Positions 2,619-46,142 of a stretch of DNA of 64,000 bases are shown one piece after another. The position numbers and the translations under genes were made by a program. This DNA comes from Thecamonas trahens ATCC 50062 (Eukaryota; Protista; Apusomonadida), in contig NW_013657661.1 in NCBI RefSeq assembly GCF_000142905.1, positions 372,001-436,000 on the forward strand, written 5' to 3'. Numbering within the stretch: position 1 is the stretch's first letter; every line of letters starts with the position of its first letter. The notes beneath the pieces were generated by a model. The model saw only the letters and a program-made list of their open reading frames with translations, was not told the origin of the DNA and did no database searches.

Positions 2619-5600
2619 TCAGCCGCGGTGCTGATGTGAGCTGTGGCGTGGGCCCGGGCCACGGAGCGGCGACGAGAGGTTGGGGCCGATGTTAGACCGC
2701 GTTGATGGCACGATGTAGCGGACAGGCGAGGAGACCGGGACCGGAACGGCAACCGGGACGGCAATATACTTGGTCTCAGTCTTGGTCTTTCCGGTCTTGG
2801 TCCGGGACGACGACGACGACTTTGACTTTGACGTCGATGAGGCGCGCGAGCGGGAGCGGGCCTTGGGTGGCGTCGACGGGCGCGACCGGCGCTTCGATCC
2901 GCTGGTCTTGCGGGCCGAGCGGCGGATCGGCTCCTCTGAAGTCGAGAGCGAGGTCGAGAGTGAGGTCGAGAGCGACGATTCGTCGTCAACGGTTGCCCGC
3001 GACGGAATTGGCGGTGGCGACGCAAAGAATGGCGGCGTGGCAAGGTATGGCGGCATCGGTGAGGCGTAGCGGCCGCGCATGTACATGTCAGTGCGCGGCG
3101 GCGGTGAAGCATACGAGCCCATAGATGCAAGCGATGAGACCCTGCGGTGCGGAACGGTCGACATCGACGACGGCGTCTCGGTCGAGTACACAACCAGGGC
3201 TCGCGAGTCAATGCTCGACTCGGTTTGAGGCGTTGCGCTCGGCGCTGACACTGGCCGCTCGCGGCGGAGCGGAGTGTCCGGTGCGTCGGCCAGGCTTGGA
3301 ACGGCAGACTGCATCTCGATGAGGGCATCGAGCTGGGCCTGGAGCTGGCGCGACTCGGCCTGAGCCAGACTCAACTCGTTGCGCATGCGCTCGCGCTCGA
3401 GCACATCCCAATGGACCACATCCTCCTTCCCTGACGCGTACAGCTCTTCCTCCAGGTCGGCGATGCGCTTGCGCAGCTCCTGCTCTACGATCTGTTCGAA
3501 CAAGACTTCGGTGTCGGAGATGAGGTGCGACGACTGCAGCGTCGACGGAAGAACGGTGTCAAGCAGCTCGTTTCGCTGCGACAGGAGCTCGTTGTAGGAG
3601 GCGCGCAGGTTGTCGAGCTCGCTGCTGAGATCCTCGTTGGCGCCTTCAGACGTCGCTAGCGTCTCCTGTACGTCGGCCAGCTGGCTGGTCAGAAGCTCCT
3701 TGGACGAGGTGAGGAGCGCAGCACGCTCGCGCTCGCGCTCAAGCTCGGTCTGCAGCTCGGAGAGACGCTTGTCGCGCGACTTGGCAGCAGCAGCGGCAGC
3801 CTTTTTGGCGGCAGAAAGCTCCGACTCAAGGTCCATGTTTGCATCAATAAGAGCGTCGAGCCGGCTCTGAAGATCCGCGGCGCGGGCCTCGGCAGATGCA
3901 ACAGCACGTTCAACCTCATCGCGCGAGACGCGCTCCGGGGAGAGCAGCTCGCGGGTGAGCGAGGTCGTGGCGTTGGTTAGCGACGAGTGCTCAGCGGTAA
4001 GCTTGTCGACATCCTGGCGGAGGAGAACGCGCTCCGAGTTGCAGACAGTGAGTGCCGCCACAGAATCGGCAAGCTCCGTCTCGAGCTCAGCAACACGAGT
4101 GCGGAGCGATGCAGCCTCGGCACGAGCTTCTAGAAGTTTTTCGACGGTCGTCTCGACAGTGGAACCTTCCGTGGTCCGGGCATCAAGCGCAGCACGGAGC
4201 GCCGCAGCATCGGCCACAGCAAGATCACGCTCGGCCTTGGTGTCAAGCAGCTGGCGGAGCGTCGACTCGACCCCAGAGGTATCTGCGAGCGCGGCGCGGA
4301 GCGCGGCGAGTTCGGCGACGGCCTCGTCACGCTCGACAGAAGCAGCTGCAAGCTGATCGCGCAAGGCGTCGGCGTCCTCAACCAGCTCGTCGCGAAGCAC
4401 GTCGAGTTGGCCACGGAACGCATCGAGCTCCAAATGGAGGTCGCGTACGTCGGTGCGGGCGGCGTCACGCTCAGCCGAGGCAGCAGCAAGCTGGCTTTGG
4501 AGCGAGTCGAGTTGCTCGTAAGTGTCGGCAGTCTCGGCTTCAAGAGCCTCGAGCCTGATTTGAACGGCATCAGCGCCCGCGCGAGCAATGTCACGCTCAG
4601 AGGTTGTAGTCTCAACTTGGTTGCGGAGTGCGTTGGCGTCAGCACGAGCAAGGTCGCGCTCGGTAGTGGCAGCTTCGAGCTGCTCACGCAGTCCGTCAGT
4701 GTCAGCACCGATCTGCTCGCGGAGAGCATCGAGTTCGGTACGCAGCCCATCGGCATCAGCACGAGCAAGGTCGCGCTCGGTAGTGGCAGCTTCGAGCTGC
4801 TCACGCAGTCCGTCAGTGTCAGCACCGATCTGCTCGCGGAGAGCATCAAGTTCGGTACGCAGCCCATCGGCATCAGCACGAGCAAGGTCGCGCTCGGTAG
4901 TGGCAGCTTCGAGCTGCTCACGCAGTCCGTCAGTGTCAGCATCGAGCTGTTCGCGGAGAGTATCGAGTTCAGTACGCAGCCCATCGGCATCGGCACGGGC
5001 AAGGTCGCGCTCGGTAGTGGCAGCTTGAAGCTGCTCGCGAAGTGCATCAATCTCAGTCCTCAGCCCATCGGCATCAGCACAAGCAGCATCGCGCTCGGTG
5101 ACAGCAGCTTCGAGCTGCTCGCGCAGTCCGTCAGTGTCAGCACCGAGCTGTTCGCGGAGAGTATCGAGTTCGGTACGCAGCCCATCGGCATCAGCACGAG
5201 CAGCATCGCGCTTGGTGGCGGCAGCATCGAGCTGCTCGCGAAGTACATCGAGCTGTTCGCGGAGAGTATCGAGTTCGGTACGCAGCCCATCGGCATCAGC
5301 ACGAGCAGCATCGCCCTTGGTGGCGGCAGCATCGAGCTGCTCGCGAAGTACATCGAGCTGTTCGCGGAGAGTATCGAGTTCAGTACGCAGCCCATCGGCA
5401 TCAGCACGAGCAAGGTCGCGCTCGGTAGTGGCAGCTTCGAGCTGCTCACGCAGTCCGTCAGTGTCAGCACCGATCTGCTCGCGGAGAGCATCAAGTTNNN
5501 NNNNNNNNNNNNNNNNNNNNNNNNNNNNNNNNNNNNNNNNNNNNNNNNNNNNNNNNNNNNNNNNNNNNNNNNNNNNNNNNNNNNNNNNNNNNNNNNNNNN

Positions 5601-8600
5601 NNNAGTATCGAGTTCAGTACGCAGCCCATCGGCATCAGCACGAGCAAGGTCGCGCTCGGTAGTGGCAGCTTGAAGCTGCTCGCGAAGTGCATCAATCTCA
5701 GTCCTCAGCCCATCGGCATCAGCACAAGCAGCATCGCGCTCGGTGACAGCAGCTTCGAGCTGCTCGCGCAGTCCGTCAGTGTCAGCACCGATCTGCTCGC
5801 GGAGAGCATCAAGTTCGGTACGCAGCCCATCGGCATCAGCACAAGCAGCATCGCGCTCGGTGACAGCAGCTTCGAGCTGCTCGCGCAGTCCGTCAGTGTC
5901 AGCACCGATCTGCTCGCGGAGAGCATCGAGTTCGGTACGCAGCCCATCGGCATCAGCACGAGCAAGGTCGCGCTCGGTAGTGGCAGCTTCGAGCTGCTCA
6001 CGCAGTCCGTCAGTGTCAGCACCGAGCTGTTCGCGGAGAGCATCGAGTTCGGTACGCAGCCCATCGGCATCAGCACGAGCAAGGTCGCGCTCGGTGGTAG
6101 CAGACTCGAGCAGATCACGCAATCCGTCGGCATCAGCACGGGCAGCATCGCGCTCGGTGGCGGCAGCATCGAGCTGCTCGCGAAGTACATCGAGCTGTTC
6201 GCGGAGAGTATCGAGTTCGGTACGCAGCCCATCGGCATCAGCACGAGCAAGGTCGCGCTCGGTGGTAGCAGACTCGAGCAGATCACGCAATCCGTCGGCA
6301 TCAGCACGGGCAGCATCGCGCTCGGTGGCGGCAGCATCGAGCTGCTCGCGAAGTACATCGAGCTGTTCGCGGAGAGTATCGAGTTCGGTACGCAGCCCAT
6401 CGGCATCAGCACGAGCAAGGTCGCGCTCGGTAGTGGCAGCTTCGAGCTGCTCACGCAGTCCGTCGGCTTCGGTATCAAGCTGCTCGCGAACTGACGTCAG
6501 CTCATCCTCGCACTGCCGCAGTTTCTCTTCGCTCTCTGCAGCGACACTCTCGAGGCGCGCCACGTCGGCTCGGGCGTCCACCAGAGCTTGTGTCAAACTG
6601 GCAGAATCGACATCACGCTCCATCTCAATCGCCTCAATCTTCGACGAAAGCTCCGCCTGACCGGCAAGAAGCTCGTCGCGATCGACTTCAAGCTCATCCA
6701 CCTTGCTTTCCAGATCGTCGTGATCCCGCTCCAACTCCTGGCATCTCGCCTCGAGCTCGTCGCAGGCGAGCTCAGCACTCTCAGCCCGTTCCAGCAGAAT
6801 CTTACGCTCAGCAGCAGCCGCGGCACATCGTGCAACCAGCTCATCACGCTCATCTTCGACCGCAACCAGGCCAACTTGTGAGACCTTGAGCGCAGCCCCC
6901 GCTCGCGCAAGCTCTGACCGCAACGTCTCAATCTCTGCAGCTGCACCCTCGCACTCTGCGCGCGCGCGCCAAAGATCTCCATTCGCAGCCTCAAGTCGAC
7001 CGTCCTCTCGGCAATGGCTCCACGGGCATCCAGCAGCGCTGTCTGTGCTGCTGCAAGTTCGACAAGAATTGCCTGTCGCTGCATCTCGTTAGCAGCCACC
7101 TTGCGCCGCAGCGCCTCTCCCACGCTTCGCAGCGCATCGGCCTCGCTGGCTGCTTCAGCACGATCGCGGGCGAGCCGCTGGATCCGCTTCAGCATGTCCT
7201 CACTCGACGCACCCACAGCAGCGAGTGCCTCCTCAAGCTCAGCCTGCAGCCGACGAACAGTTGCTTCGGCGCGCGCATGCGCAGCACGACTGGCAGAAAG
7301 CTCCATTTCGACCACGGTTTCACCACCAGTAAACGACTCCGAAGAGTTGGTGGTGCCAACAGCATCGGTACTACCAACCTGAGAGAGTGCAGCCTCGCTC
7401 CGGCTTGCGTCAAGCAACAGGCGTAGACGATCCACCTCGCCCATAGCAGTGTCGCGCTCGCCCATAACGTCGGCCAAAGACGACATCGAGTCAGCCAGCC
7501 GCCCTGCCAGAGAGACAAAGGCCTCCATTGTCTCTGCCACTGGCACTTCGTCACCAAGCTCTGCAAGAAGAGCCTGCACACGTGCAAGCTCTGGCTCAAT
7601 CGTGTCCGCCGCGGCAGTTGTAGGAAGAACCATCCGTGTAGCAGAGGCAACTTCTGCCAGCTCAGCATGCCCGTGATACACACCTTCTGCGACTTGGTGT
7701 GAGTTGGTGCCTTGGTGGGAAGCAGTCTCAAGCGTGTCCAGCATGTCGCGCAAATGGCGGAGCTCGCCTTGCGCTTCGGCCTCAGCAGCAGCAGCCAGAA
7801 GTGCCTCTGCGCCCAAGCGCGCCACCTCGGCTTCCAAATCACTAATCCTACACTGCGCCGCAATATGATCATCCACCACAGGTGTTGTACCTTCTGTGGC
7901 CGTATCTGCTACGGGCTCTGCTTGGCGATCCGCCAGCTCCACCTTTGCGGCTGCCAGCTCAGTCTCCAATTCAGCAACATAGTCCAGGGTGGGGCGCGAT
8001 GAAAGATCACGCTCTGCCTTGGCGAGCTGGAGCTCAACAGCAGCAAGCTTGTCTGTGAGCCCATCCGTTGCACTCTCGGTTGACTTGGATGACAACTTCT
8101 TCGTCGCCTTCAGCTCACGCTCCAGAACAGCTACGCGACTGGCAAGCTCATCAGCGGCAGATGCCTGGCGCTTCAGGACCTGGTTCTCCACCTCCAGACG
8201 AGCCACAGTCTGTGCGGCCTCCTCCAGACGTGCTTCCGTGCTGTTGAGCTGCGCTTTCAGCTGTTCACAATCCAGTGTCCCAGCATCCTCCAGCTCACGC
8301 TCGGCTATCTCCAGCTGTTTGACGAGCACCTGGCGCTCAGCCTCGGCCCGCTTGCTGGTCACGCTGCAAGCCTGCAGCTGCCCTTCGACTCCTGCCAAAT
8401 TTTGCTCGAGCACCTCCTTCTCGGCCTCAAGCCTGACCACAGCCTCGTCCTTGGCCGTCACCTCGGCTTCCAGCTCGGCCACACGTGCTGCGCTGGTCGC
8501 AGCGTCGGCAGCCTGCTCATCTGCAGCCGCAATCCGCCGCTCGAGAACCTCCTTCTCGGCCTCAAGCCTGACCACAGCCTCGTCCTTGGCCGTCACCTCG

Positions 8601-11600
8601 GCTTCCAGCTCGGCCACACGTGCTGCGCTGGTCGCAGTGTTGGTAGCCTGCTCATCTGCAGCCGCAATCCGCCTCTCGAGAACCTCCTTCTCGGCCTCAA
8701 GCCTGACCACAGCCTCGTCCTTGGCCGTCACCTCGGCTTCCAGCTCGGCCACACGTGCTGCGCTGGTCGCAGCGTCAGCAGCCTGCTCATCTGCAGCCGC
8801 AATCCGCCGCTCAAGCACCTCCTTCTCGGCCTCAAGCCTGACCACAGCCTCGTCCTTGGCCGTCACCTCGGCTTCCAGCTCGGCCACACGTGCTGCGCTT
8901 GTCGCAGTGTCGGTAGCCTGCTCATCTACAGCCGCAATCCGCCGCTCAAGCACCTCCTTCTCGGCCTCAAGCCTGACCACAGCCTCGTCCTTGGCCGTCA
9001 CCTCGGCTTCCAGCTCGGCCACACGTGCTGCGCTTGTCGCAGTGTCGGTAGCCTGCTCATCTACAGCCGCAATCCGCCGCTCAAGCACCTCCTTCTCGGC
9101 CTCAAGCCTGACCANNNNNNNNNNNNNNNNNNNNNNNNNNNNNNNNNNNNNNNNNNNNNNNNNNNNNNNNNNNNNNNNNNNNNNNNNNNNNNNNNNNNNN
9201 NNNNNNNNNNNNNNNNNNNNNNNNNNNNNNNNNNNNNNNNNNNNNNNNNNNNNNNNNNNNNNNNNNNNNNNNNNNNNNNNNNNNNNNNNNNNNNNNNNNN
9301 NNNNNNNNNNNNNNNNNNNNNNNNNNNNNNNNNNNNNNNNNNNNNNNNNNNNNNNNNNNNNNNNNNNNNNNNNNNNNNNNNNNNNNNNNNNNNNNNNNNN
9401 NNNNNNNNNNNNNNNNNNNNNNNNNNNNNNNNNNNNNNNNNNNNNNNNNNNNNNNNNNNNNNNNNNNNNNNNNNNNNNNNNNNNNNNNNNNNNNNNNNNN
9501 NNNNNNNNNNNNNNNNNNNNNNNNNNNNNNNNNNNNNNNNNNNNNNNNNNNNNNNNNNNNNNNNNNNNNNNNNNNNNNNNNNNNNNNNNNNNNNNNNNNN
9601 NNNNNNNNNNNNNNNNNNNNNNNNNNNNNNNNNNNNNNNNNNNNNNNNNNNNNNNNNNNNNNNNNNNNNNNNNNNNNNNNNNNNNNNNNNNNNNNNNNNN
9701 NNNNNNNNNNNNNNNNNNNNNNNNNNNNNNNNNNNNNNNNNNNNNNNNNNNNNNNNNNNNNNNNNNNNNNNNNNNNGGCCTCAAGCCTGACCACAGCCTC
9801 GTCCTTGGCCGTCACCTCGGCTTCCAGCTCGGCCACACGTGCTGCGCTGGTCGCAGCGTCAGCAGCCTGCTCATCTACAGCCGCAATCCGCCGCTCGAGA
9901 ACCTCCTTCTCGGCCTCAAGCCTGACCACAGCCTCGTCCTTGGCCGTCACCTCGGCTTCCAGCTCGGCCACACGTGCTGCGCTGGTCACAGCGTCGGCAG
10001 CCTGCTCATCTGCAGCCGCAATCCGCCGCTCGAGAACCTCCTTCTCGGCCTCAAGCCTGACCACAGCCTCGTTCTTGGCCGTCACCTCGGCTTCCAGCTC
10101 GGCCACACGTGCTGCGCTGGTCGCAGCGTCAGCAGCCTGCTCATCTACAGCCGCAATCCGCCGCTCGAGAACCTCCTTCTCGACCTCAAGCCTGACCACA
10201 GCCTCGTCCTTGGCCGTCACCTCGGCTTCCAGCTCGGCCACACGTGCTGCACTGGTCGTAGCGTCGGCAGCCTGCTCATCTGCAGCCGCAATCCGCCGCT
10301 CAAGCACCTCCTTCTCGGCCTCAAGCCTGACCACAGCCTCGTCCTTGGCCGTCACCTCGGCTTCCAGCTCGGCCACACGTGCTGCGCTTGTCGCAGCGTC
10401 AGCAGCCTGCTCATCTACAGCCGCAATCCGCCGCTCGAGAACCTCCTTCTCGGCCTCAAGCCTGACCACAGCCTCGTCCTTGGCCGTCACCTCGGCTTCC
10501 AGCTCGGCCACACGTGCTGCGCTTGTCGCAGTGTCAGCAGCCTGCTCATCTACAGCCGCAATCCGCCGCCCAAGCACCTCCTTCTCGGTCTCAAGCCTGA
10601 CCACAGCCTCGTCCTTCGTTCTCAATGCAGCCTCGAGACCCATCTCCCGCTCCTCGGCCGCTTCGACAGCCGCCCCAAGCCGCTTGCGCAGCTTGCCCAC
10701 CTCGGCCGTCGCGGCTGCGGCATCGCTCTCGGCAGCTAGCTTCGCCGACTTGGCCTCCACAAGCTGCTGCATCAGATCCCGCTGCGATGCATCCGACGCT
10801 GCACTTCTAACACTCTCCCGGACCACAGCAAGCTCGGCCTCGGCAGCTGCAAGCTTCTCCTCCAACTCGCGAATCATCTCACCCGAACGTGACTCGTCGG
10901 TCGCAGAGTCAACGCGGACGATAACATCAGCCTTGGCCGCCAGTGCCTCGTCCAGTTCGCGCTCAAGCTCTTCCACTCGCTCGCTGAGCAAGTCGTTGCT
11001 CTTAGATGCCGCCTCCAGCTTATTGCGCAACCTCTGCGTCTCAGCATCGCCGCCTTCGCTCGCCGCTACTGCCTCGCGCTCACCCTCCAGAGAGGCCACT
11101 CGTGAGCTCAACGCATTTGCGTTGGCTTCGGCAAAAACAAGCTGCTTCCGAAGCCGCTTCTCCTCAACACTCTCCGCGGCGTCCCTGGCATCAAGAACAC
11201 CTTCAAGCTCCCGGACTCGCGACTTCAGGCTACCCGCTCGTCGCGTTGCCTCCTTCAGTTCGCGCTGGACATGTGCCAGCTCGGCCACCGCGGCTGCCGC
11301 ATCGCTCTCGGCCTCCAGCTTAAAAGCCTTGGCTTCCACAAGCTGGCGCATGATATCGTCTTCGCGTCGGCCCTCGCTCGCAGCATGCGCAAGCGCTGTC
11401 TCGCGCTCGAGTGTCCACACTCGCTCTTGGAGCTCACGAACGCTCTGCTTTTCATCAAGCAGCTGCTGCTGAAGACGGAAGACCTCGCGATCAGCAGCGG
11501 CCTCGCGCTCCGCACGCGCCTCGGCGAGTGCATTCTCGAGCTCCTGCACGCGACCACTCAGCTCATGCGTGCTCTCGCCCGCTGAGAGCAGCTTGCTGTG

Positions 11601-17600: not shown

Positions 17601-20600
17601 CAGGTGCGGTGTCACGCATCGGTGTCAGCGTCGCCAGTCGTGACTGCAGCGCGTCAAGGCGGTCGCTGTCGTAGTGGTGAACGTGCGACGGCGGAGTCGA
17701 AGGTGTCGCCAATGTCGGTCCTCGCGAGACAGCAAGATCCTCCACGCCGAGTGATGCCTGAGGCACAGTCTCTGAGGCTGCAAGGCGCTGCTCAAGCCTT
17801 GCCAGTCGGGCAATGGTGGCCGAGTTTGCAGCAGCAGCCTGCGCCTCTGCGGCGTCGCGAGTACGTTGCAGCTCGGTCTCGAGGTCTGCGAGTTTGCGCG
17901 CGGCCGTCGACTCGGCGTTGATCGCTGCCGTCTTGGCCTGGGCCAGCTCAGCCTCGAGGTTTGCAAGCTTGCGCGCGGCCGTCGACTCGGTGTCGGCCGC
18001 TGCACCCTGCTGCTCATCACGCATTTCCACCGCCATGGGAGCGCTGCTGCTTGCTTCCGCAGCTGTTGTAGATATCTCGTGCTTCATCCTCTCAATAACA
18101 GCCCTCGAGTCTGCCAACTCGGTCTCACATGCTGCCAACTTGTGGCGCAGGGTAGCCTCTGCTCCGTCTTCCTGCGCGACGAGAGCACCAGCGCGCGCAG
18201 TAACAATGTCAAGCTCGGCGCGGGTATTGGCGAGCTGCTTGCGGGCGTCGGCAAGACGGGCGTCGGTCTCAATCAACTCGGTCTCGAACCGCTTGCTCTT
18301 TGCCTCGGCATCGGCGAGTTTGCCGGTAAGGTCTGAGTACTCGGAGCGAGCATTCGACCGGAAGTGCTCGCTCTCGTTGCGAAGCTGGTCGTTGGCTGCC
18401 TCTAGTGCCGACACCTGCGCCGAAACCTGGTCGAGCTTGGTCTGGGCGTCAGCAAGGGCGCTCGCGGTCTGGTCGCGGTCGCTGAGTGCATCTGCCAGAG
18501 AACTTTCAAGCTCTGCAATCTTCGCTTGACTGGCAGCAAATGCTGAAGACTCTGTCGCTTGCAAAGAGCTCTTGACTTGTGCCAGTTCTTCAGCCTTGCC
18601 CGCAGCATCGGCCTGGGCGGTCTCAAGCATCTGCTTGGCCTCGGCGAGCTCCTTGGCCTTGCTATCCGCGTCAGCCCGGGCTTTGTCGAGATCCTTGGCC
18701 GCGCCGGTTTGAGCTTCCTCAAGCGCCTGCCTGACTTCGCCGAGCTCCTTGGCCTTGGCATCGGCATCGGCCTGGGCAGTCTCAAGCGCCTGCCTGACTT
18801 CGCCGAGCTCCTTGACCTTGGCCTCGGCATCGGTCTGAGCAGTCTCGAGCGCCTGCCTGACTTCGACAAGCTCATTCGCCTTGGCATCGGCATCGGCCTG
18901 GGCGGTCTCAAGCACCTGTCTGACTTCGACAAGCTCATTCGCCTTGCTCTCCGCGTCAGCCTGGGCTTCGACAAGCTCCTTGGCCTTGGCCTCGGCATCG
19001 GCCTGGGCAGTCTCAAGCGCCTGCCTGACTTCGCCGAGCTCCTTGACCTTGGCCTCGGCATCGGTCTGAGCAGTCTCGAGCGCCTGCCTGACTTCGACAA
19101 GCTCATTCGCCTTGGCATCGGCATCGGCCTGGGCGGTCTCAAGCACCTGTCTGACTTCGACAAGCTCATTCGCCTTGGCCTCCGCGTCAGCCTGGGCTTC
19201 GACAAGCTCCTTGGCCTTGGCCTCGGCATCGGTCTGGGCGGTCTCAAGCACCTGCCTGACTTCGCCGAGCTCCTTGGCCTTGGCATCGGCATCGGTCTGG
19301 GCGGTCTCGAGCACCTGCCTGACTTCACCGAGCTCCTTGGCCTTGGCCTCGGCATCGGCCTGGGCGGTCTCAAGCGCCTGCCTGACCTCGCCGAGCTCAT
19401 TCGCCTTGCTCTCCGCGTCAGCCTGGGCTTTGACAAGCTCCTTCGCCTTGCTCTCGGCATCGGCCTGGGCGGTCTCAAGCGCCTGTCTGACTTCGCCGAG
19501 CTCCTTGGCCTTGGCCTCGGCATCGGCCTGGGCGGTCTCAAGCACCTGCCTGACTTCGACAAGCTCATTCGCCTTGGCATCGGCATCGGCCTGGGCGGTC
19601 TCAAGCACCTGTCTGACTTCGACAAGCTCATTCGCCTTGCTCTCCGCGTCAGCCTGGGCTTCGACAAGCTCCTTGGCCTTGGCATCGGCATCGGCCTGGG
19701 CGGTCTCAAGCACCTGTCTGACTTCGACAAGCTCATTCGCCTTGCTCTCCGCGTCAGCCTGGGCTTCGATAAGCTCCTTGGCCTTGGCCTCGGCATCGGT
19801 CTGGGCGGTCTCAAGCACCTGCCTGACTTCGCCGAGCTCCTTGGCCTTGGCATCGGCATCGGCCTGGGCGGTCTCAAGCGCCTGCCTGACTTCGACAAGC
19901 TCATTCGCCTTGCTCTCTGCGTCAGCCTGGGCTTCGACAAGCTCCTTTGCCTTGCTCTCGGCATCGGTCTGAGCTTCCTCAAGCGCCTGCCTGACTTCGC
20001 CGAGCTCCTTGGCCTTGGCCTCGGCATCGGCCTGGGCAGTCTCGAGTGTCTGCTTGACCTTGGCAAGCTCCTTCACCATACTCTCAGCGTCGGCCCGGGC
20101 CTCAGCAAGCTCCTTGGCTTTCCTCTCGGCATCAGCCTGGGCTGCGCGAGCCTCGGCCTCCGCCATGGCGCCACTCCTCCTGATCCGCACCAGCTCAGCC
20201 TCGGCAGCATCGCGCGCGACTTCGACTTCTGCCAATCGCTCGCGCGCCGCCTCGCGCGCCGCAGTTTCATCGGCTTGCTTCCGCGCTGCCCGTGCAAGGT
20301 CGGCCTTGAGCTCATTCACGTGCTTGGACGTCGTCCGTGTCTCAGAGTCGAGAATCTGCGCCTTGCGCTCAACTTCGGCTTCAGCCTCGCGGGCACGCGC
20401 CATAGCCCGCTCAAGATCAGCCTTGAGCTCAGCCATCTCGCGCCCAATCCGCTCCGCACGCCGCGCTTCTTCTTCGGCGGCATCACGCGCAGTCTCGAGT
20501 TCGCTGCTTGCGGTTCGAGCCTTGGTGCGCAGCTCGCGCTCGCGCTCCTCGGCCGCCGCCAAACGCGACGTCGCGTCATCGCGGGCTGCTGTTGCTGATC

Positions 20601-38830: not shown

Positions 38831-41800
38831 ATGTACCCGCTTCAACTGCTCATCATCATCTGGGTGGTTGCTCTATCTGGTTCATGCCTGGGGCAGGTCA
38901 ATTCCTATCGCCGCGGCTTCCCCTCCAACACCCCGGTTCTTCCCACATTCACGCCCCACACCGACCGAGCATGGGCCGACATGGGCACCGCCGCGCCATG
39001 GAACACCGCATATGCTGTCCTCCCGCTCGAGTCGTCGTCAGATTTGGTCCTTGCCAAGGCTGTGAATGGCACTTACTTCCCCGCCCCGCCCCATGCCGTC
39101 CCGAGCTACCCACGTGGATTCAGCAGCAAGCCAGGAATTACGCCCGGTACCGGGGGCCTGGCCACCGCACTCGGCGCTCCTACTGATGCTGGCATTCCGC
39201 TCATTCGCTGGGATGTGGCGCCCATCTTTGATGTGACAGAGTCGACTATTGGCGTCTCGTTCTGGTTTCGGTACACTGGGCGTGTTGCGTCCGGAGAGTC
39301 GACGGCCAAGACCTCGATCTTCGCCTCGCATCTTCCGAGCGACCACACATACACTGCCGGCGCTGGCGTGCCGGCTGTCTTTCCGATTCTCCTTTTCTCC
39401 TCCGAGTTCTTTAACGTCACCATCAACTCGGACAAGGGCGACGTGGCCCTCATCGGCGGCGGGGTTACCGCCAACGACCCGGCACTCGGCAATGTGCTCG
39501 ACGGCCACGCCCACTACATTGTTGCTCGCGTCATCGACCACATAGACGCGGCCGTCATTTCTGTAGACGGCGTGGCGATCGATGCCGACATCCCGGGTAT
39601 TCGAAGCAACGCTCCTGTGACCTCGTCCGAGCCAGCGTTCTTCTGGGCCGAGATCGACGCTGTCCTCGACCACATCACCGTTGGCTCGATGCCTTACCGC
39701 ATCTTCGGGGGCAAGATCTACTCCTGGGGCGGTATCCACACCCAGGACCTCGATGCTGCGTGGGACATGGCGCTCGCGCTCAATCCAACGCACTTTTACA
39801 TCCACCCAGACACCGCCGGCACTGCTGCGATTGACTACGGCTCCTCACCGGCCACAGCTACCATCATCGGTCCGCCGCCACCAACAGTGCCTACCTCACG
39901 TGCGCTGTCGCCGTTCACCCAGCCGTTCCCTGTCGGCCCGGGGTACGTGTTTTCGGCCACCGGAGCTGCGCCGTCACTCACCTTTTCATTCTCGGCTTGG
40001 ATCTACCTCTCGTCGTCGGCACGTCTCGCCGGCGCCACCCACGCGGTTGCATATGTCCAGGACATGTTTTCACTTGAGATTACACCGTCGGGCACACTGC
40101 GGCTTGAAGCATCGGTTCTGCCGGGCCCGCTTGAGTCCGATGCCTCATTTGACCTCCGCGATGCCGCCTGGCATCATGTTGCGGTCGTTCAGGAGAGCAG
40201 CAACACATCAGTTTGGATCGACGGCTCGGTGGTGGCCCACGGGGTGCCAGACCTAGCCGGCGCAGCTGCAGCAACCTGGACGACGTCTCGAGGCGCGTCC
40301 AGCCCACTGGTTCTTGGCGCCAACCCTAGCACTGGTACTTCGCTCTGCGCCGACTGCGGCCTTGACATTGTCACGCTGTTTGATGACTTGGCGCTCTCGA
40401 GCCAGGCTATTTTTGACCTCAACCTCGGCTATCGCATCGGATCGCGGGCCAACCCGGCATGGACTTGCAATCATGTTGCCGCACAATGGCCGCGCGCCCG
40501 CCACCCGTTTATCTCGGTCTTTGGGCGCTTCGAGTACGAGACTACACCAATCAAGCGGACGGTGTGCGACCTTGCCACCGACGGCGGCGGCTGGCGGCGG
40601 CTTCTTGCCTGCGCTCACGATGCCAGCGGCGCGTTGGTCTTTGACTGGCCGCGGCGTGTCACCTTCCGCTCTGCTCCGCAGGGAACGCATGTCGGGCGGC
40701 TGACAACCGAGCTCCAAATCCGCGCCACTTTTAATGACTCTTCGACGGTGGGCGGGGAGCTGCATGCGGCGACCGCATCGGCGCCGGGATCTACGCTCGA
40801 CAACTGGGCGACTGACGGCTCGTCGACTCGTCCGAACGCGGTCAACCGTCTCGTACTGGGCCAGTCGATCGACCGCCTCTCCACTTTTCCGGCGTCAGAG
40901 TGGAGCTACGTCGGGACACGGCTGACCGCAAGTCATCTGAGCTACACACCCGGGCCCAGTGGTGCGGCGGAGTTTGTCCAGGCCCCATACGGTCACGACT
41001 CGGACGCCGATCTCCACATTGTGAAGCCTGGCGAGCTGGGCGAGCCGATAGGCCGATGCGATGTTACCGGCTCGGGCCCGCTCGATGGGTTTGAGATCTG
41101 GATTCGTGCCAGCCCAGCTGCCTTCACCAACACACTTGCGGTTTCTGCCATCGACTATGAGGGACTGGCATACCTGTACGAGTCGAGCGTCCGAGCTCTG
41201 ACTCACCTCACGACCCAGTCGCTGTCGTGGTCCGATACCCACATCATGCCGGCGACCGATGCCGACTTTCTCATTGTCAACAGCGAGGACTCGGGTGGGA
41301 CGGCAAACATCTGCGCCGGTATCCTGCTCAGCACCGCGCGCACGGCGTACTACGTGCCGGACGCCTGGCGCTGTACGCCGACGTCGAGCCTCGCCGACTT
41401 TGACGATGTCATCACCGTCTTGCCGGACACCTCCTCTTGGGGCTCAGTGCAGACGATGTCGGTGGCGGTAGCAGGCCAGCATGTGGCGCCGTGGAAGCCA
41501 TTTACGTTTGCGCCCTGGTTTGCGCGCTGGGTCAAGTCCAAGGAGACAAGCGCCGCGTCGATGGTATGTGTTGTCCGACTCCGCTGCCCGGCGGTAGACC
41601 GCAGCCACGGAAACCTGCTCTGCTCGCATGGCTCTGGCGTCGATTCCGAGTGTTCGCTCGTCTGCGATGCCGGCTTTGCACTGCAGTATGGACCAGCTAT
41701 CGCAAAATGTACGACGGACGGGTGGCAGCCGGCACCGCTCGGCATCTGCCTCCCGTCGTCGTTTGTGGCCTCACCGCTGGCGACCGGCTCCGGCGGCTCC

Positions 41801-44800
41801 TCGCTTGCCCTGTTGACGGCCACCGTCGAGTACGGGTCCTCGCTCGCGGCAGTCCGCGATGCCTCGGGCGCGCTGGCGGTGGCTGTCGGTGACGCTGGGG
41901 CTGACGTTGCCTTTGTGGGCACCTACTCGGCAACAGGAGGACTCGACATCTCGCCATCTTCCAACGCCAGCGCGCTAGCGAACGGAACTCGGTTTGGTGA
42001 AGGCGTCGCGCTGGTGGGCGATGTCAACGGCGACGGGCTCGGTGATCTGGCGGTTCTCAGTGCAGGTGACGAGGCCTCGGTCTCTGTCGCACTTGCACCG
42101 GACTGGTCTGTCGTCGGTCCCTGGACCCGCACCCAACTTGGTACCCGGTGTGGCGTGCTTGCTGCAGCGGGCGATGTCAACAGCGACGGCGTGCCCGACG
42201 TTGTTGTCGGATGTCCTGACGCCGACGGCGGAAGCGGCCGGATTGCTCTCCTTCTTCTTGGTTCGGACGGCCGGGCCATAGTGATGACGTGGGCGAGTCT
42301 GCCTGGTGTGACTCAATTGGGGCGAAGCCTGGTTCCGCTTCCCATCGGCGCGCTGTGCAGCGTGTACGACAGCGTGGGCTTGCTGGTTGGAACGACCAAT
42401 GCGCTCCACGTCGCCTTGCTCGAGTACTCGGGGCCCGGAAACGCGACCCTTGTCCTGCTCGACAACGTGGTGGATGAGGCTGGCGGCTCGCCAGTGGTGG
42501 ACGGCTTGCTGGGCAGCGTGAGCCGGGCCGGCGCCAAAGGGCTCGGAGCCGGGGCAGTGTATCTCGGCTCGCGGCTTGATCCGAGTACTGGGCTCGGCGA
42601 GGTGGCGGTTCTGGCTGCCGGCCACGGCATGATCCTTCCACTGGGACTCTCGCTGTCGGCACAGTACGGGTCGTGCGCTGCCGGTACAAGTAGTAGTTTC
42701 GTTGCGAGCGGCGAGCCAGCGTTAGCGTCGATACTGTTGCTTGATGACGACAGCGCGGTTGGCGATGCGCTCCAAGGCACCTTACTGCGCCGTGGGAGCG
42801 GCTAGTCGGCACCGGCATGACGTTGCTCGAGTCGAGCTCTGAGGATCAGATCATGCTCGGAGTGGGCGTCCCGCTCTCGCACGGACGGGGCGCGGTGGGT
42901 TCCATCAAACTGGATGTGCCGATGCTTGGCCCACGGGTCTCAGCGCTCACGCTCGGACACGCTCCGGAACTTGGCTCGCGACTCGGTGTCGCAGTTGGCG
43001 GCGGCAATGTGGTCTGGGTATCGGGCTCGGGTCTGTCACCAGCCGCCCTGGCGGGCATCAGCTTGCACTTTGTCGAGTGGCAAGTGGGCGGAGGCGTCGT
43101 CGACGGTGGATGGAGCGCCACATGCAGTGTCATGGCTGGATCGCACTCGGGCACGACGGCCTTTAGCTGCCTCACAGCCCACGATCCGACCAGTGCACGG
43201 ATGCCATCGCTGACGACCGGCACAAGCGCGGCGTGTCTGGCAACCGCACGTGGCGGCGGCGCACCAGAGCTGGTGATACCGCGAGTATGCCTGCGGTTTG
43301 CGCTGCCAGGCGCAGTGGCGAATACGCCGCGAGTGTTCAACGCGCGCGAAGATGCTAGCAATGCGTTTGGGGCGGGCGTGGGCGCGACATTGGCGATGGG
43401 CCAGTCGATAGTGGGCCACTTTGACCACGATGGCGACGGTGCGTCGGACATGCTGTTTTCGATCGGCAACTGGGCTCCTCATCACATGGCACTGCTGCTG
43501 ACCGATCCAGCGTCACGAGCCGGAGGTAGCACGCTCGGCTTTAGCAAGTACGTAGAACTCAAGAACGGAGTTAATGGTGTCCCGCCCGGAACCATTGACG
43601 CAAGCCATCACGTGGCGCATGCCGCTGGCTGGGTTGGCGACGTGGACGGCGACGGTAGCAGTGACTACGCGCTGGGCTCCAAGGCGGCGACGGTGCTTCA
43701 TAGCCACAGCTCGCGCAACGGGTCTGTGGCGTCTATCTCTCAGTTTGCGGTTGACTTTGAGTGTCTTGGCGGCGTGGTGCTGATGAAGCGCGCGTTTGAG
43801 GGGATCGGCGCAGTTGTGGCATGTAGCTCGTTCCACGTGCCTGCGCTCGGCGTGAGAGTTTATCGGCTGGAGTACGAGCCACAGTCGGCCAACCTGACGG
43901 GTGTGCTGCTGGCAAACCACACAACGGTGGTAACACCGGCCTACTTTGGGCGGTCACTGACCGGCATCGGCGAGACGGGCGAGCCCGGATGGTATGAGGT
44001 GATGGTGGGTGGCCGCGGCGACGAGGTGGTCTTTGGCAGCCTCTCGACAGCAACTGGAGAGCTGAGCAGCCGTGGATGGACGACGATCTCGTACAGCAAC
44101 GACCTCGAACCGCTGCTTCCCGCTTCGCAGCACGGGCTATGGAGCGTAGGCTTTGGTTCTTCCGGTGCGTGTGTCGGCGATCTGGACGGAAACGGAGTGG
44201 TCGATGTTGTCATCGGCGACGAAACGGCCGTGGGCCCAGGTTATGGCGCGGTGTTTGTGGTGCTGCGCGGGCGCGCGCGTCCGGTGGTCGGGGTGCGGGC
44301 AGTGGGTGTGACCCGTCACGGCCAGACGGGCGGCGCGCTTGATGTTCCGGGCTCTAGCTGGCTGCTGTACGGGACCGGGATGGGCTTTCTGGGCCACAGC
44401 TGGGGCGCCGGGACACACACGGTGGAACTCGGGGTTTCTGCGCGCGAGGATCGACCGCTAGCACGGTTTGGCAACCTGGCGCCGTCTGGCTCGATTGTGG
44501 TACACTCGTTGGTGTCTGTGGGGAGCGGGCCGACGGTGATGCGAATTCACCCCCGCTTGTGGCCATGGATTCCGGTGTCGTGCTGCAGGTGGAGGGCATC
44601 CACTTAGACCGGACGGCCGGCGGTGTGTTTGCGCTAGTCGACAGTGCGGGAGTTGCTGCACCGGGCGAGTGCCGTGTTGTGGGCAGCCCGATTTCGACCG
44701 ACCGGGCTGCGTGCAGCCTGACTGGCGCAGTCGAGGGTCGTTTCCGGCTTGTGGGCAGCGGAGCTTATGCCAGCCAGTCGACACCGAGCGCGTGGGTTGC

Positions 44801-46142
44801 GATCTACCAGCCTGACACATCGCTGCAGGTGACGGGCGTTGCTCCGGCGAAAGTTTTGCCGGGAGACACGTTGACGGTAAGTGGCATGTCGCTTGGTTCA
44901 GGGTTTGTGACGCGTGTGTGGATTGGCAGCGTGGCTTGCCAAGTGGCAGCCGGGTCGAGCGCAACCGAGCTCGTTTGCGTGGTCGGAGAGCTGCCGCCCG
45001 TAGCAGTGGCGCGCAACGAGTCGTACGTCGGGACAGTGTCGCTCGAGGTGTCACGTGTGGCTACCGGGCAGGTGGAGCGGGTTGAAGGCGGCAACGTGAC
45101 GGTGATCAACGTGTGGGCGAGGAGCATTAGCGCGCCGCCGCCAGCATCGCCCAAGACCACCGCTGTCAACGACAACGTGTTGCCTGCGTCTGGAGCGGCG
45201 TCGACAGGCGCGATGGCGATGTACTTGCTGGTCGCGATTGTCGTTTGGATGCTGATGTTTGGAGTCCGGCAGCGGCGGAAGAACGTGGCCAAGTACCGGC
45301 GCGAGCCGGAGAAGTGGCTTGGGCTGGGGTTAGACCAGTACGTGGTTCGGAACCACATGGTGTTTGGCATTGTAGCGAGCTGCAAGCATGATGTGTTTGG
45401 TCGGATGGCGCGGGCAATCGATCTCTCGGTCCACCTTGCGCTGATGTTCTTTGTCACCGCGTGTCTGCAGATACTCAAGCCCGAGTCGTTTGCGTCCGAC
45501 ACTGAAGTGGTGTCGCTGGAGCGGCTACTGGACATGGTGTTTATCAATGTGGTGACGCTTCTGATGTCTGTGGTGCTGGGTGTGCCGATGGTTCGATGGG
45601 CGCTGAAGCGCGGGCAGATTGCGATTGCGGTGGTGCTCAACGCAGGACTGGTCGCACTAGGCGCCGTTGTGGTCACCCTCCCGCTATATGTGCCTGGATT
45701 TGAGGTCAATCTTGGCGCGCTAGCCTTTGTGCTCGGCCTCGGACTGGCGGTGTCGTGGCTGGTGATGGACCCGCTGAAGGTGACGGCGCTGTACGTCGTC
45801 CTAGGCTACCGGGCAATCGAAGTGCGCCAGGGTGGCAACGGCGGCTCAACAGCGGTGGCGGCGGTGGCACCGGGCGATTATGCCGGCGCAGGCAAGACGC
45901 TGCCGACCAAGTCGGAGTCGTCGGATGCTGCGGCTCCATCGGATGCCGAATCTCGAAGCGGTGGCGACGTCGATGTTGACCTCGAGGAAGGCACTGCAGA
46001 CCGATCGGAGCAGAAGTCGCGGTCGGGATCTGGCTCTGGGTTCGAGCTCGAGTCGAGCAGTCTCGCCGAGCTGAAGCAGCGGCCGCGGCGCGGGTCCGCG
46101 GTGCCGAGACTTGAGGGCCGGCGCCGGCGTGGACCGGGATAA
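38831..46142 (+). CDS. Large (~2,430 aa) cell-surface receptor: signal peptide, LamG x2, fibrinogen-like motif, CCP/sushi, FG-GAP clusters x2, IPT/TIG, polycystin-1-like 5-TM region; two 1-nt frame breaks
   Basis: ORFs 38831-42805, 42817-44607 and 44559-46142 join on adding one base at ~42781 and at 44550-44554. Motifs WHHVAVV, CDLATDGGGW, CSLVCDAGFAL, GDVNGDGLGDLAV, GDLDGNGVVDVVIG, VTGVAP..VLPGDTLTVSG, NH.VFGI...FGRMAR, MDPLKV. Confidence 0.82.

What the first reader, a model, noticed from the sequence alone, without database searches (positions are those of the whole stretch)
38831..46142. Chimeric adhesion receptor: integrin-alpha-like FG-GAP propellers on a polycystin-1-like 5-TM anchor
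Seen: signal peptide, two LamG/ConA-like regions, a CDLATDGGGW fibrinogen-like motif, a CCP module, two separate FG-GAP clusters with DxDxDG Ca-loops (~41860-42400 and ~43390-44420), IPT/TIG repeats, five TM helices and an acidic/basic tail. Segments VRNHMVFGIVASCKHDVFGRMAR (before TM2) and AVSWLVMDPLKV (TM5) parallel polycystin-1 KHIWLSIWDRPPRSRFTRIQR and SFLGWEPLKV. Known: PKD1 has a 5-TM N-terminal membrane domain plus PLAT, GAIN/GPS and a 6-TM channel-like domain. None of the latter are visible here, nor is the integrin-alpha GFFKR motif. Inference: the PKD1 5-TM module is used as a stand-alone anchor or signalling unit for a lectin/propeller ectodomain, a possible undescribed protist adhesion, prey or mechanosensing receptor family.
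Basis: partly seen in the sequence, partly recalled or inferred. Interest (0 to 1): 0.8.

Follow-up and report, generated by a model that had tools for sequence, protein, structure and literature searches.

The report
Protist receptor with polycystin-1-like membrane module
A gene of the marine flagellate Thecamonas trahens encodes a large adhesion-type surface protein whose five-helix membrane part is predicted to fold like the poorly understood peripheral membrane domain of human polycystin-1; the same module sits under many different outer domains in this protist, so it looks like an undescribed receptor family and a possible free-standing precursor of part of polycystin-1.

Summary
Three abutting + strand ORFs (38831-46142) read as one gene of about 2,430 codons. 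It has a signal peptide, one Pfam LamG domain, a sub-threshold Sushi hit, five integrin-type Ca-loop FG-GAP blades in two clusters, TIG domains, five hydrophobic helices and an acidic-then-basic tail. The first LamG region and a fibrinogen domain were not confirmed.

A confident AlphaFold model of the membrane module (pLDDT 86.9) matches only polycystin-1 well. Across 48,161 PDB representatives, PC1 is the only chain with Z >= 8 (Z 11.0-12.1, about 150 residues, 15-18% identity). The match covers PC1 3243-3624, from just after PLAT through TM5. A model of a family member 19% identical gave the same top hit (Z 10.7).

HMMER profiles do not reach PKD1, so homology is likely but not proven. TM1 lies outside the aligned range. 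PLAT, GAIN/GPS, REJ, a channel domain and GFFKR are all absent.

The module defines a small family: 16 loci in this genome and 48 representatives among 1.84 billion proteins. The named members are all Thecamonas hypothetical proteins. Ectodomains vary (FG-GAP, 14 Sushi, beta-helix/PMP). Function is inferred. Two frame breaks remain unresolved and are probably assembly errors.

The parts
38831..42805 (+). Segment 1 of the gene (1324 codons plus stop): signal peptide and most of the ectodomain
   Evidence: ORF list and translation; Pfam hits
38831..38896 (+). Predicted signal peptide (MYPLQLLIIIWVVALSGSCLGQ)
   Evidence: Hydrophobic N-terminal segment aa 1-25; read by eye, no dedicated predictor was run
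39956..40405 (+). Laminin_G_3 / ConA-like lectin domain (aa 376-525)
   Evidence: PF13385, E 4.2e-11, 43.6 bits against a cut-off of 27.6
40565..40594 (+). CDLATDGGGW string (a fibrinogen-like motif only)
   Evidence: Present; no Fibrinogen_C hit at E <= 5
41627..41737 (+). Sushi/CCP-like module, below threshold
   Evidence: PF00084, 18.6-19.6 bits against a cut-off of 20.7
41963..42253 (+). FG-GAP cluster 1, with Ca loops DVNGDGLGD and DVNSDGVPD
   Evidence: PF01839/PF13517; integrin alpha-V propeller match, E 1e-4; motif scan
42748..42805 (+). Junction 1: overlap of open frames 2 and 1, holding the first frame break (a 1-nt indel or a short GT-AG intron)
   Evidence: Open-frame limits; many GT-AG options keep the frame open, so it is not resolved
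42817..44607 (+). Segment 2 (596 codons from the first ATG; frame open from 42748): FG-GAP cluster 2, with no signal peptide or TM of its own
   Evidence: FG-GAP_3 at aa 436-466; Ca loops at 43423, 43639 and 44179
44557..44579 (+). Junction 2: single-base frame break inside the first TIG-like domain, next to a C5 run at 44552-44556
   Evidence: tblastn of the uninterrupted environmental homologue P0005: frame +3 to 44556, frame +2 from 44580, with 8 homologue residues across 23 nt; every GT-AG alternative deletes aligned residues
44559..46142 (+). Segment 3 (frame open from 44358): TIG domains, 5-TM module, tail and stop
44826..45020 (+). IPT/TIG domain (ORF3 aa 90-154)
   Evidence: PF01833, E 2.5e-5, 24.6 bits against a cut-off of 20.9
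45150..45845 (+). Conserved C-terminal module: juxtamembrane NVLPxSGAxS motif, TM1 (45207-45266), cytosolic KYRxxPxxW / H / FxRxxR segment (45267-45410), TM2 (45411-45479), TM3 (45519-45599), TM4 (45612-45692), TM5 with D/E-P (45705-45794), and GGNGG (45831-45845)
   Evidence: Hydropathy; family alignments; AlphaFold model with pLDDT 86.9; PC1 as the only strong structural match
45846..46142 (+). Low-complexity cytoplasmic tail (acidic, then basic) and stop codon
   Evidence: Translation; model pLDDT below 50

Best explanation
The three ORFs are one gene of Thecamonas trahens. It encodes a surface receptor-like protein of about 2,430 residues, N-terminus outside and C-terminus inside. The order of parts is: signal peptide, ConA/LamG lectin-type domain, unassigned regions, a possible CCP, Ca-binding FG-GAP propeller blades of the integrin type, a TIG stalk, then a conserved C-terminal five-helix module and a disordered charged tail.

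The module's TM2-TM5 bundle, together with the cytosolic segments before TM2 and after TM5, has the fold of the peripheral N-terminal membrane domain of polycystin-1. It is probably homologous to it. It stands alone here: no PLAT, no GAIN/GPS, no REJ and no TRP-like channel half.

The module is a reusable cassette of an apusomonad-centred family with at least 16 loci in this genome. It is combined with different adhesive ectodomains.

Inferred mechanism (not shown): the ectodomain binds a surface or glycan ligand in a Ca-dependent way. The 5-TM bundle anchors the protein. Its strongly conserved cytosolic face (KYRxxPxxW, His, FxRxxR, GGNGG) relays binding or directs trafficking.
For: One gene. 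The open frames abut or overlap. Only segment 1 has a signal peptide and only segment 3 has TM helices. FG-GAP blades lie on both sides of junction 1. An uninterrupted environmental homologue (P0005, 42-47% identical) reads straight across junction 2.

Fold. The window-module model has pLDDT 86.9 and pTM 0.80. Foldseek puts PC1 chains at ranks 1-4 with probability 0.99-1.00 and TMq 0.45-0.49, while non-PC1 rows score 0.15 or less. VIA-align puts 11 PC1 entries on top (Z 11.0-12.1, rmsd 2.7-4.9, 142-167 residues, 15-18% identity); the next hit scores 8.3. In the unbiased scan of 48,161 chains, PC1 is the only Z >= 8, at 11.0 against 7.2. The replicate on P0042 gave Z 10.7 against 8.0 and Foldseek probability 0.94-1.00. 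The aligned PC1 range is 3243-3624, in human P98161 numbering.

Family. There are 15 single-sequence and 19 profile matches in this genome, making 16 loci. Among 1.84e9 proteins there are 48 representatives. Ectodomains are FG-GAP, Sushi x14 plus hemopexin, beta-helix/PMP, or unassigned. Ectodomain types are scattered on the module tree.

Constraint. dN/dS is 0.175 against a partial duplicate.

Topology. The loop charges follow the positive-inside rule (by eye).
Against: - HMMER profiles of the family do not reach PKD1, either in the PDB sequence set at E <= 10 or in 1.84e9 representatives at E <= 1e-3.
- Pfam has no model that hits the module.
- Z values of 11-12 are below the level at which the tool's notes say helical bundles can match by arrangement alone.
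- TM1 is outside the aligned range.
- Both models rest on alignments of the same family.
- The gene has two frame breaks in this assembly. None of the three ORFs (first two as listed, third from its first ATG, 44565) is in the protein collection as an exact sequence, so an intact transcript is not shown.
- There are no functional data. The first LamG, the fibrinogen-like region and the CCP are unconfirmed.
Confidence: 0.7

Rival explanations
1. The 5-TM module is a lineage-specific membrane anchor. Its likeness to the polycystin-1 N-terminal membrane domain is convergent, a common four-helix packing, with no shared ancestry or shared mechanism.
For: There is no sequence-level link by HMMER. 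The Foldseek E-values are only 0.1-0.4. The VIA-align notes warn that Z below about 13 can be a generic arrangement for helical bundles. TM1 is not aligned.
Against: PC1 is the only chain of 48,161 that stands out, by 2.7-3.8 Z units, in two models. The match covers about 150 residues, including the non-helical segments before TM2 and after TM5. Identity is 15-21%, against 4-13% for nearly all other hits. The match starts exactly where PLAT ends in PC1 and ends just after TM5.
Confidence: 0.25
2. This copy is a pseudogene: the two frame breaks are real and no full-length protein is made.
For: There are two frame changes, at 42748-42805 and 44557-44579. None of the three ORFs (first two as listed, third from its first ATG, 44565) is in the protein collection as an exact sequence.
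Against: There is no in-frame stop within any of the three long segments of 1324, 596 and 527 codons. dN/dS of the module against its duplicate is 0.175. Break 2 lies next to a C5 homopolymer. Paralogues in the same assembly show similar breaks, which their annotators bridged with 26-56-nt 'introns'.
Confidence: 0.15
3. It is a true integrin alpha subunit with an unusual anchor.
For: It has FG-GAP blades with canonical cation loops and a weak direct match to the integrin alpha-V propeller. Thecamonas is reported to have integrins (bioRxiv 10.1101/2020.04.29.069435).
Against: There is no Integrin_alpha2 leg domain hit. It has five TM helices rather than one. There is no GFFKR-type motif. LamG, TIG and other modules are foreign to integrin alpha.
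Confidence: 0.03

Closest known systems
Polycystin-1 (PKD1 / PKD1L / PKDREJ family), N-terminal membrane domain TM1-TM5
   Same: Both have a large modular adhesive ectodomain outside, followed by a five-helix membrane domain. The predicted fold of TM2-TM5 and the flanking cytosolic segments matches PC1 3243-3624 (Z 10.7-12.1, 15-21% identity). The overall topology is the same, N-terminus outside and end of TM5 inside.
   Different: There is no GAIN/GPS before TM1. There is no PLAT between TM1 and TM2; the loop here is about 48 residues. There is no REJ and no TM6-TM11 TRP-like channel half, because the protein ends about 115 residues after TM5. PLAT gave no match in the whole genome, although the control genomes did not match either. 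HMMER detects no similarity.
Integrin alpha subunits
   Same: It has FG-GAP beta-propeller blades with D-x-D/N-x-D/N-G-x-x-D cation loops and a direct weak match to integrin alpha-V blades. Ig-like (TIG) domains sit between the head and the membrane.
   Different: There is no integrin leg (Integrin_alpha2) domain, no single-pass anchor and no KxGFFxR tail. It carries extra LamG and CCP-like modules. The defining features are taken from bioRxiv 10.1101/2020.04.29.069435.
Thecamonas trahens hypothetical proteins AMSG_08515, AMSG_06259, AMSG_06248, AMSG_02464 and AMSG_02878
   Same: They share the same C-terminal 5-TM module with the same motifs (profile E-values from 1.5e-85 to 2e-7).
   Different: Their ectodomains differ: 14 Sushi plus hemopexin, right-handed beta-helix, or DUF4215-type Cys-rich regions. 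All are annotated only as hypothetical or by their ectodomain.

Membership tests
Polycystin-1 family (PKD1, PKD1L1-3, PKDREJ) | GAIN domain with a GPS cleavage site just before TM1 | tested here: not met
   Pfam finds no GPS or GAIN in any segment. The nearest HL[ST] strings are at ORF1 aa 702 and 792, far from TM1.
Polycystin-1 family (PKD1, PKD1L1-3, PKDREJ) | PLAT domain in the TM1-TM2 cytosolic loop | tested here: not met
   The loop is about 48 residues and has no Pfam hit at E <= 10. PF01477 found nothing in the genome, but its controls were silent too.
Polycystin-1 family (PKD1, PKD1L1-3, PKDREJ) | Eleven TM helices, with a C-terminal TRP-like (PKD_channel) half | tested here: not met
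   There are only five hydrophobic segments and the stop comes about 115 residues after TM5. PF08016 does not hit.
Polycystin-1 family (PKD1, PKD1L1-3, PKDREJ) | Fold of the peripheral TM1-TM5 domain | tested here: met
   Met for TM2-TM5 and their flanks: PC1 is the only Z >= 8 among 48,161 chains in two models. TM1 is not in the aligned range.
Polycystin-1 family (PKD1, PKD1L1-3, PKDREJ) | Detectable sequence homology to the PKD1 TM1-5 region | tested here: inconclusive
   HMMER profiles do not reach PKD1. Structure-based identity is 15-21%. A profile-profile test could not be run because no PKD1-family sequences were available to the tools.
Integrin alpha | Beta-propeller of FG-GAP blades with cation-binding loops | tested here: met
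   PF01839/PF13517 hits, five canonical loops, and an integrin alpha-V match at E 1e-4. The number of blades and propellers was not determined.
Integrin alpha | Integrin leg (thigh/calf, Integrin_alpha2) domains | tested here: not met
   No such Pfam hit at E <= 0.1. TIG domains are found instead.
Integrin alpha | Single TM helix followed by a KxGFFxR motif | tested here: not met
   There are five TM helices, and neither GFFKR nor GFF.R is present.
Apusomonad 5-TM receptor family (defined here) | C-terminal module with Y in TM1, KYRxxPxxW, H, FxRxxR, GxP in TM3, E/D-P in TM5 and often GGNGG, placed below a secreted ectodomain | tested here: met
   The window sequence carries every signature position. 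It is the best own-genome match to the family profile, at E 3.4e-92.

The most novel reading that the evidence does not exclude
The peripheral TM1-5 domain of polycystin-1 began as a free-standing receptor module of the kind kept in apusomonads. PKD1 would then have arisen by fusing such a receptor to a PKD2-like channel subunit and inserting PLAT and GAIN. In Thecamonas the two halves are still separate genes: 16 loci with the 5-TM module, and 22 PKD_channel matches (8 of them strong) with no PLAT. They may work together in trans, so that varied adhesive ectodomains gate or target polycystin-2-type channels.
Probability: 0.2. Interest if true: 0.85.

Novelty: new variant of a known kind. Interest (0 to 1): 0.68.

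Why it matters
The TM1-TM5 domain of polycystin-1 is described only as a peripheral complex beside the channel core (PMC7728438; PMC8357825). I found no account of its origin or of free-standing relatives in the papers searched.

A protist family in which this module works alone, under interchangeable ectodomains, would do three things:
- give that domain an evolutionary history;
- point to the residues that matter, namely the conserved His and the two Arg before TM2 and the E/D-P in TM5;
- offer a small, separable system in which to ask what the domain does.

As a lead from memory only: the hypomorphic folding variant PC1 R3277C lies inside the aligned stretch. If that stretch is gapless, R3277 falls on or next to one of the two conserved arginines.

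The family also adds a class of adhesion-type receptors to an organism that is used to reconstruct the pre-animal adhesion toolkit.

Tried and rejected
- Sequence links to PKD1: phmmer and two family profiles against PDB sequences, and Pfam at E <= 10. None reached PKD1.
- Protein-language-model atlas: only unnamed ciliate and diatom clusters, at scores below 0.9. No use was made of it.
- Word-index protein searches: the TM module found only P0005. ORF2 found nothing.
- Metagenome locus scan with ORF2: one weak FG-GAP locus (L042, 32% identity), uninformative for junction 1.
- A PKD1-like gene in Thecamonas to compare with: there was no PLAT match. The long ORF behind a weak PKD_channel hit on C28 is a four-domain voltage-gated channel, not PKD1-like.
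- Own-genome paralogues of ORF1 aa 26-375 and aa 531-932: none were found, so no alignment could be built to model them.
- GC3 periodicity to locate break 1: too weak to decide.
- Exact look-up of the three ORFs in the protein collection: absent.
- Complex prediction (TM module against a Thecamonas PKD2-like channel, L028): the tool was busy and then declared unavailable, and nothing was folded. This gives no evidence either way.
- Reading as three separate genes: rejected. See the full report.
- The joined protein was never searched or folded.
Full report
**Organism and locus.** Earlier notes of this scan name the genome as Thecamonas trahens. I confirmed this. Family hit P0001 is NCBI AMSG_08515 of T. 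trahens ATCC 50062, and it maps at 99.9% identity onto contig C42 of the window's own assembly. The window is G000:C19:372001-436000.

**Gene structure.** The + strand carries three long ORFs: 38831-42805 (1324 aa), 42817-44607 (596 aa) and 44559-46142 (527 aa), in frames 2, 1 and 0. The second frame is already open from 42748 and the third from 44358, so the frames overlap and there is no intergenic space.
- Only segment 1 starts with a signal-peptide-like hydrophobic stretch.
- Segment 2 has neither a signal peptide nor a TM helix.
- All five TM helices lie in segment 3.
- FG-GAP blades lie on both sides of the first junction.

*Junction 2.* An environmental protein, P0005, comes from an uninterrupted ORF on ENA contig L041 and is 42-47% identical. 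It aligns in frame +3 up to nt 44556 and in frame +2 from nt 44580, with 8 of its residues opposite 23 nt of the window. This is what a one-base frame break looks like, and it sits next to a C5 run at 44552-44556. Every GT-AG alternative would delete residues that align to P0005.

*Junction 1 (42748-42805).* This junction is unresolved. A one-base indel or one of many possible short GT-AG introns would each give a continuous frame. GC3 periodicity is too weak to decide between them.

*Are the breaks real?* Annotated paralogues in the same assembly bridge similar breaks with 26-, 32- and 56-nt 'introns'. One of these removes TM1 of AMSG_06259. Frame breaks therefore seem common in this assembly or this family, and I read them as probable sequencing errors, though a pseudogene is not excluded. 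The C-terminal module has evolved under purifying selection relative to a partial duplicate on contig C1 (dN/dS 0.175 over 194 codons, dS 0.68).

I did not search or fold a joined protein. The pieces were handled separately by reference.

**Ectodomain.**
- *Pfam results:* Laminin_G_3 at aa 376-525 (E 4e-11), FG-GAP/FG-GAP_3 at ORF1 aa 1064-1141 and ORF2 aa 436-466, and TIG at ORF3 aa 90-154. Sushi scores just under its cut-off.
- *Cation loops:* five loops of the integrin type start at nt 42020, 42173, 43423, 43639 and 44179. They fit the consensus quoted in bioRxiv 10.1101/2020.04.29.069435.
- *Direct integrin match:* ORF1 aa 1045-1135 matches integrin alpha-V propeller residues 212-305 at E 1e-4.
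- *Absent:* there is no integrin leg domain and no GFFKR.
Only the ten-residue string is present.
- *Not modelled:* aa 26-375 and aa 531-932 have no paralogue in the genome, so I could not build alignments to model them.

**The 5-TM module.** The loop charges give an N-out, C-in topology: RQRRKNVAKYRRE after TM1, an acidic TM2-TM3 loop, RWALKRGQ after TM3, and YRAIEVRQ after TM5.

*Family size.* The module alone finds 15 matches in the genome. A 27-sequence profile finds 19 matches at 16 loci. A profile search of 1.84 billion representative proteins found only 48 hits at E <= 1e-3, and none of PKD1 size or type.

*Members.* Named members are all T. trahens hypothetical proteins: AMSG_08515, AMSG_06259, AMSG_06248, AMSG_02464 and AMSG_02878. 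One hit comes from an unnamed EukProt transcriptome and the rest from ENA or Logan assemblies. One environmental contig carries a neighbouring gene that is 61% identical to a Thecamonas protein and has similar G+C, so that contig at least comes from an apusomonad-like organism.

*Ectodomains.* They differ between members: FG-GAP; 14 Sushi plus hemopexin; right-handed beta-helix or PMP repeats; DUF4215-type regions; or nothing recognisable. On a tree of 35 modules the ectodomain types are scattered. For example, FG-GAP-bearing P0036 is sister to DUF4215-bearing P0041 at 100/99 support. One of the FG-GAP labels in that tree, P0023, was assigned by eye. The C1 locus shares only the last kilobase (TIG plus module, 75.5% nucleotide identity) with this gene. 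Together these points indicate that the module has been shuffled between genes.

*Signature.* Over 35 sequences the most conserved positions are Y25, R42, P53, H69, G73, D81, R85, R88, S140, G144 and P208; majority residues include W56, P146 and E207. A frequent GGNGG and a VAP follow TM5. Most of these positions face the cytosol.

**Test of the polycystin-1 claim.** The AlphaFold2 model of window:45150-45908, built with alignment A2, has mean pLDDT 86.9 and pTM 0.80.

| Search | Result for polycystin-1 (PC1) | Best non-PC1 result |
|---|---|---|
| Foldseek, window model | ranks 1-4; probability 0.99-1.00; TMq 0.45-0.49; 18-20% identity; E only 0.2-0.4 | probability 0.15 or less |
| VIA-align on Foldseek's list, window model | 11 entries on top; Z 11.0-12.1; rmsd 2.7-4.9; 142-167 aligned; 15-18% identity | mGlu2, Z 8.3 |
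| VIA-align, 48,161 PDB representatives, window model | 8z6b_A, the only Z >= 8; Z 11.0 | Z 7.2 |
| VIA-align, same scan, P0042 model | again rank 1; Z 10.7; 143 aligned; 18% identity | Z 8.0 |
| Foldseek, P0042 model | top ranks again; probability 0.94-1.00 | probability 0.33 or less |

P0042 is a family member 19% identical to the window module. Its model has pLDDT 80.4.

The aligned ranges are model residues 43/58 to 213/234 against PC1 3243/3250 to 3610/3624. These entries use human P98161 numbering. From my own knowledge of the UniProt entry, PLAT ends at about 3233 and TM2-TM5 span about 3278-3602. The match therefore starts just after PLAT and ends just after TM5, and it skips the long unresolved TM3-TM4 loop.

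Limits on this result:
- TM1 is not in the aligned range.
- Z values of 11-12 are under the level at which the tool's notes accept helical bundles without reserve.
- Both models draw on the same family alignment.
- HMMER sees no similarity to PKD1.
- I could not run a profile-profile comparison, because no PKD1-family sequence was available from the tools and I did not type one.

I put homology at about 0.65-0.7 and fold similarity at about 0.85.

**What it is not.** It is not a member of the PKD1 family as defined, because it has no GPS, PLAT, REJ or channel half. It is not an integrin alpha, because it has no leg domains, no single-pass anchor and no GFFKR. In the whole genome, PF01477 (PLAT) gave no match, although that search's controls were silent too. 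PF08016 (PKD_channel) gave 22 matches, eight of them strong. None lies next to a 5-TM-module locus (by comparing the coordinates).

**Mechanism.**
- *Shown:* the domain content, the five helices, the family, the conserved cytosolic face, the fold match and purifying selection.
- *Inferred:* the ectodomain binds substrate, prey or glycan ligands through the lectin-type and Ca-dependent propeller parts. The TIG domains act as a stalk. The 5-TM bundle, with its small cytosolic sheet, is the constant signalling or sorting unit. That sheet is formed by the strand after TM1 and the strand after TM5 (secondary structure).
- *Speculative:* the module cooperates in trans with PKD2-like channels. The tool that could have probed this was unavailable.

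**Novelty.** Full-text searches found the TM1-TM5 domain described only as a peripheral complex of PC1. They found no report of a stand-alone relative or of this apusomonad family. First-reader notes of this scan on other pieces of the genome describe FG-GAP or beta-helix proteins with a multi-TM domain (s1-746643, s1-744765). These probably are paralogues, but I did not map them.

**Verdict.** This is a new architectural context for a module known so far only inside polycystin-1.

Noticed in passing
G000:C1:407233-408317 (loci L002, L007, L018): A partial duplicate of only the last kilobase of this gene (TIG plus the 5-TM module). It is 75.5% identical in DNA and 80% in protein, and has its own frame break in TM5. 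It sits downstream of an unrelated PH/RUN-domain gene and is annotated as a 181-aa protein (P0002). This is either a truncated copy or a snapshot of module shuffling.
   Followed up: partly
G000:C26:390571-390596 and 391662-391717; G000:C15:28186-28217: The annotated models of paralogues AMSG_06259 and AMSG_02464 bridge frame changes with 26-, 56- and 32-nt 'introns', all of length 2 mod 3. The 56-nt one removes the TM1 helix that the genomic frame encodes. These are likely annotation workarounds for assembly frameshifts.
   Followed up: partly
window 45831-45845 and family alignment A2: A GGNGG motif followed by a V-A-P tripeptide recurs just after TM5 in many family members. It lies in a region that the model leaves unstructured. 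Its role is unknown.
   Followed up: no
window 4635-6467, 8404-10729, 18718-20142 (minus-strand ORFs 2619-22668): Very long ORFs containing near-identical tandem repeats of 105-234 nt (up to 97% identity). They look like giant coiled-coil-type repeat proteins upstream of the gene studied.
   Followed up: no
G000:C28:61438-67000 (L038): An open frame of more than 1,850 codons encodes a four-domain voltage-gated cation channel (Cav/Nav-like). It was met while checking a weak PKD_channel hit.
   Followed up: no
whole genome G000: There are 22 PKD_channel (PF08016) matches, eight of them strong (E <= 4e-31), but no PLAT match. Thecamonas therefore seems to have several polycystin-2-like channels and no classical polycystin-1.
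   Followed up: partly
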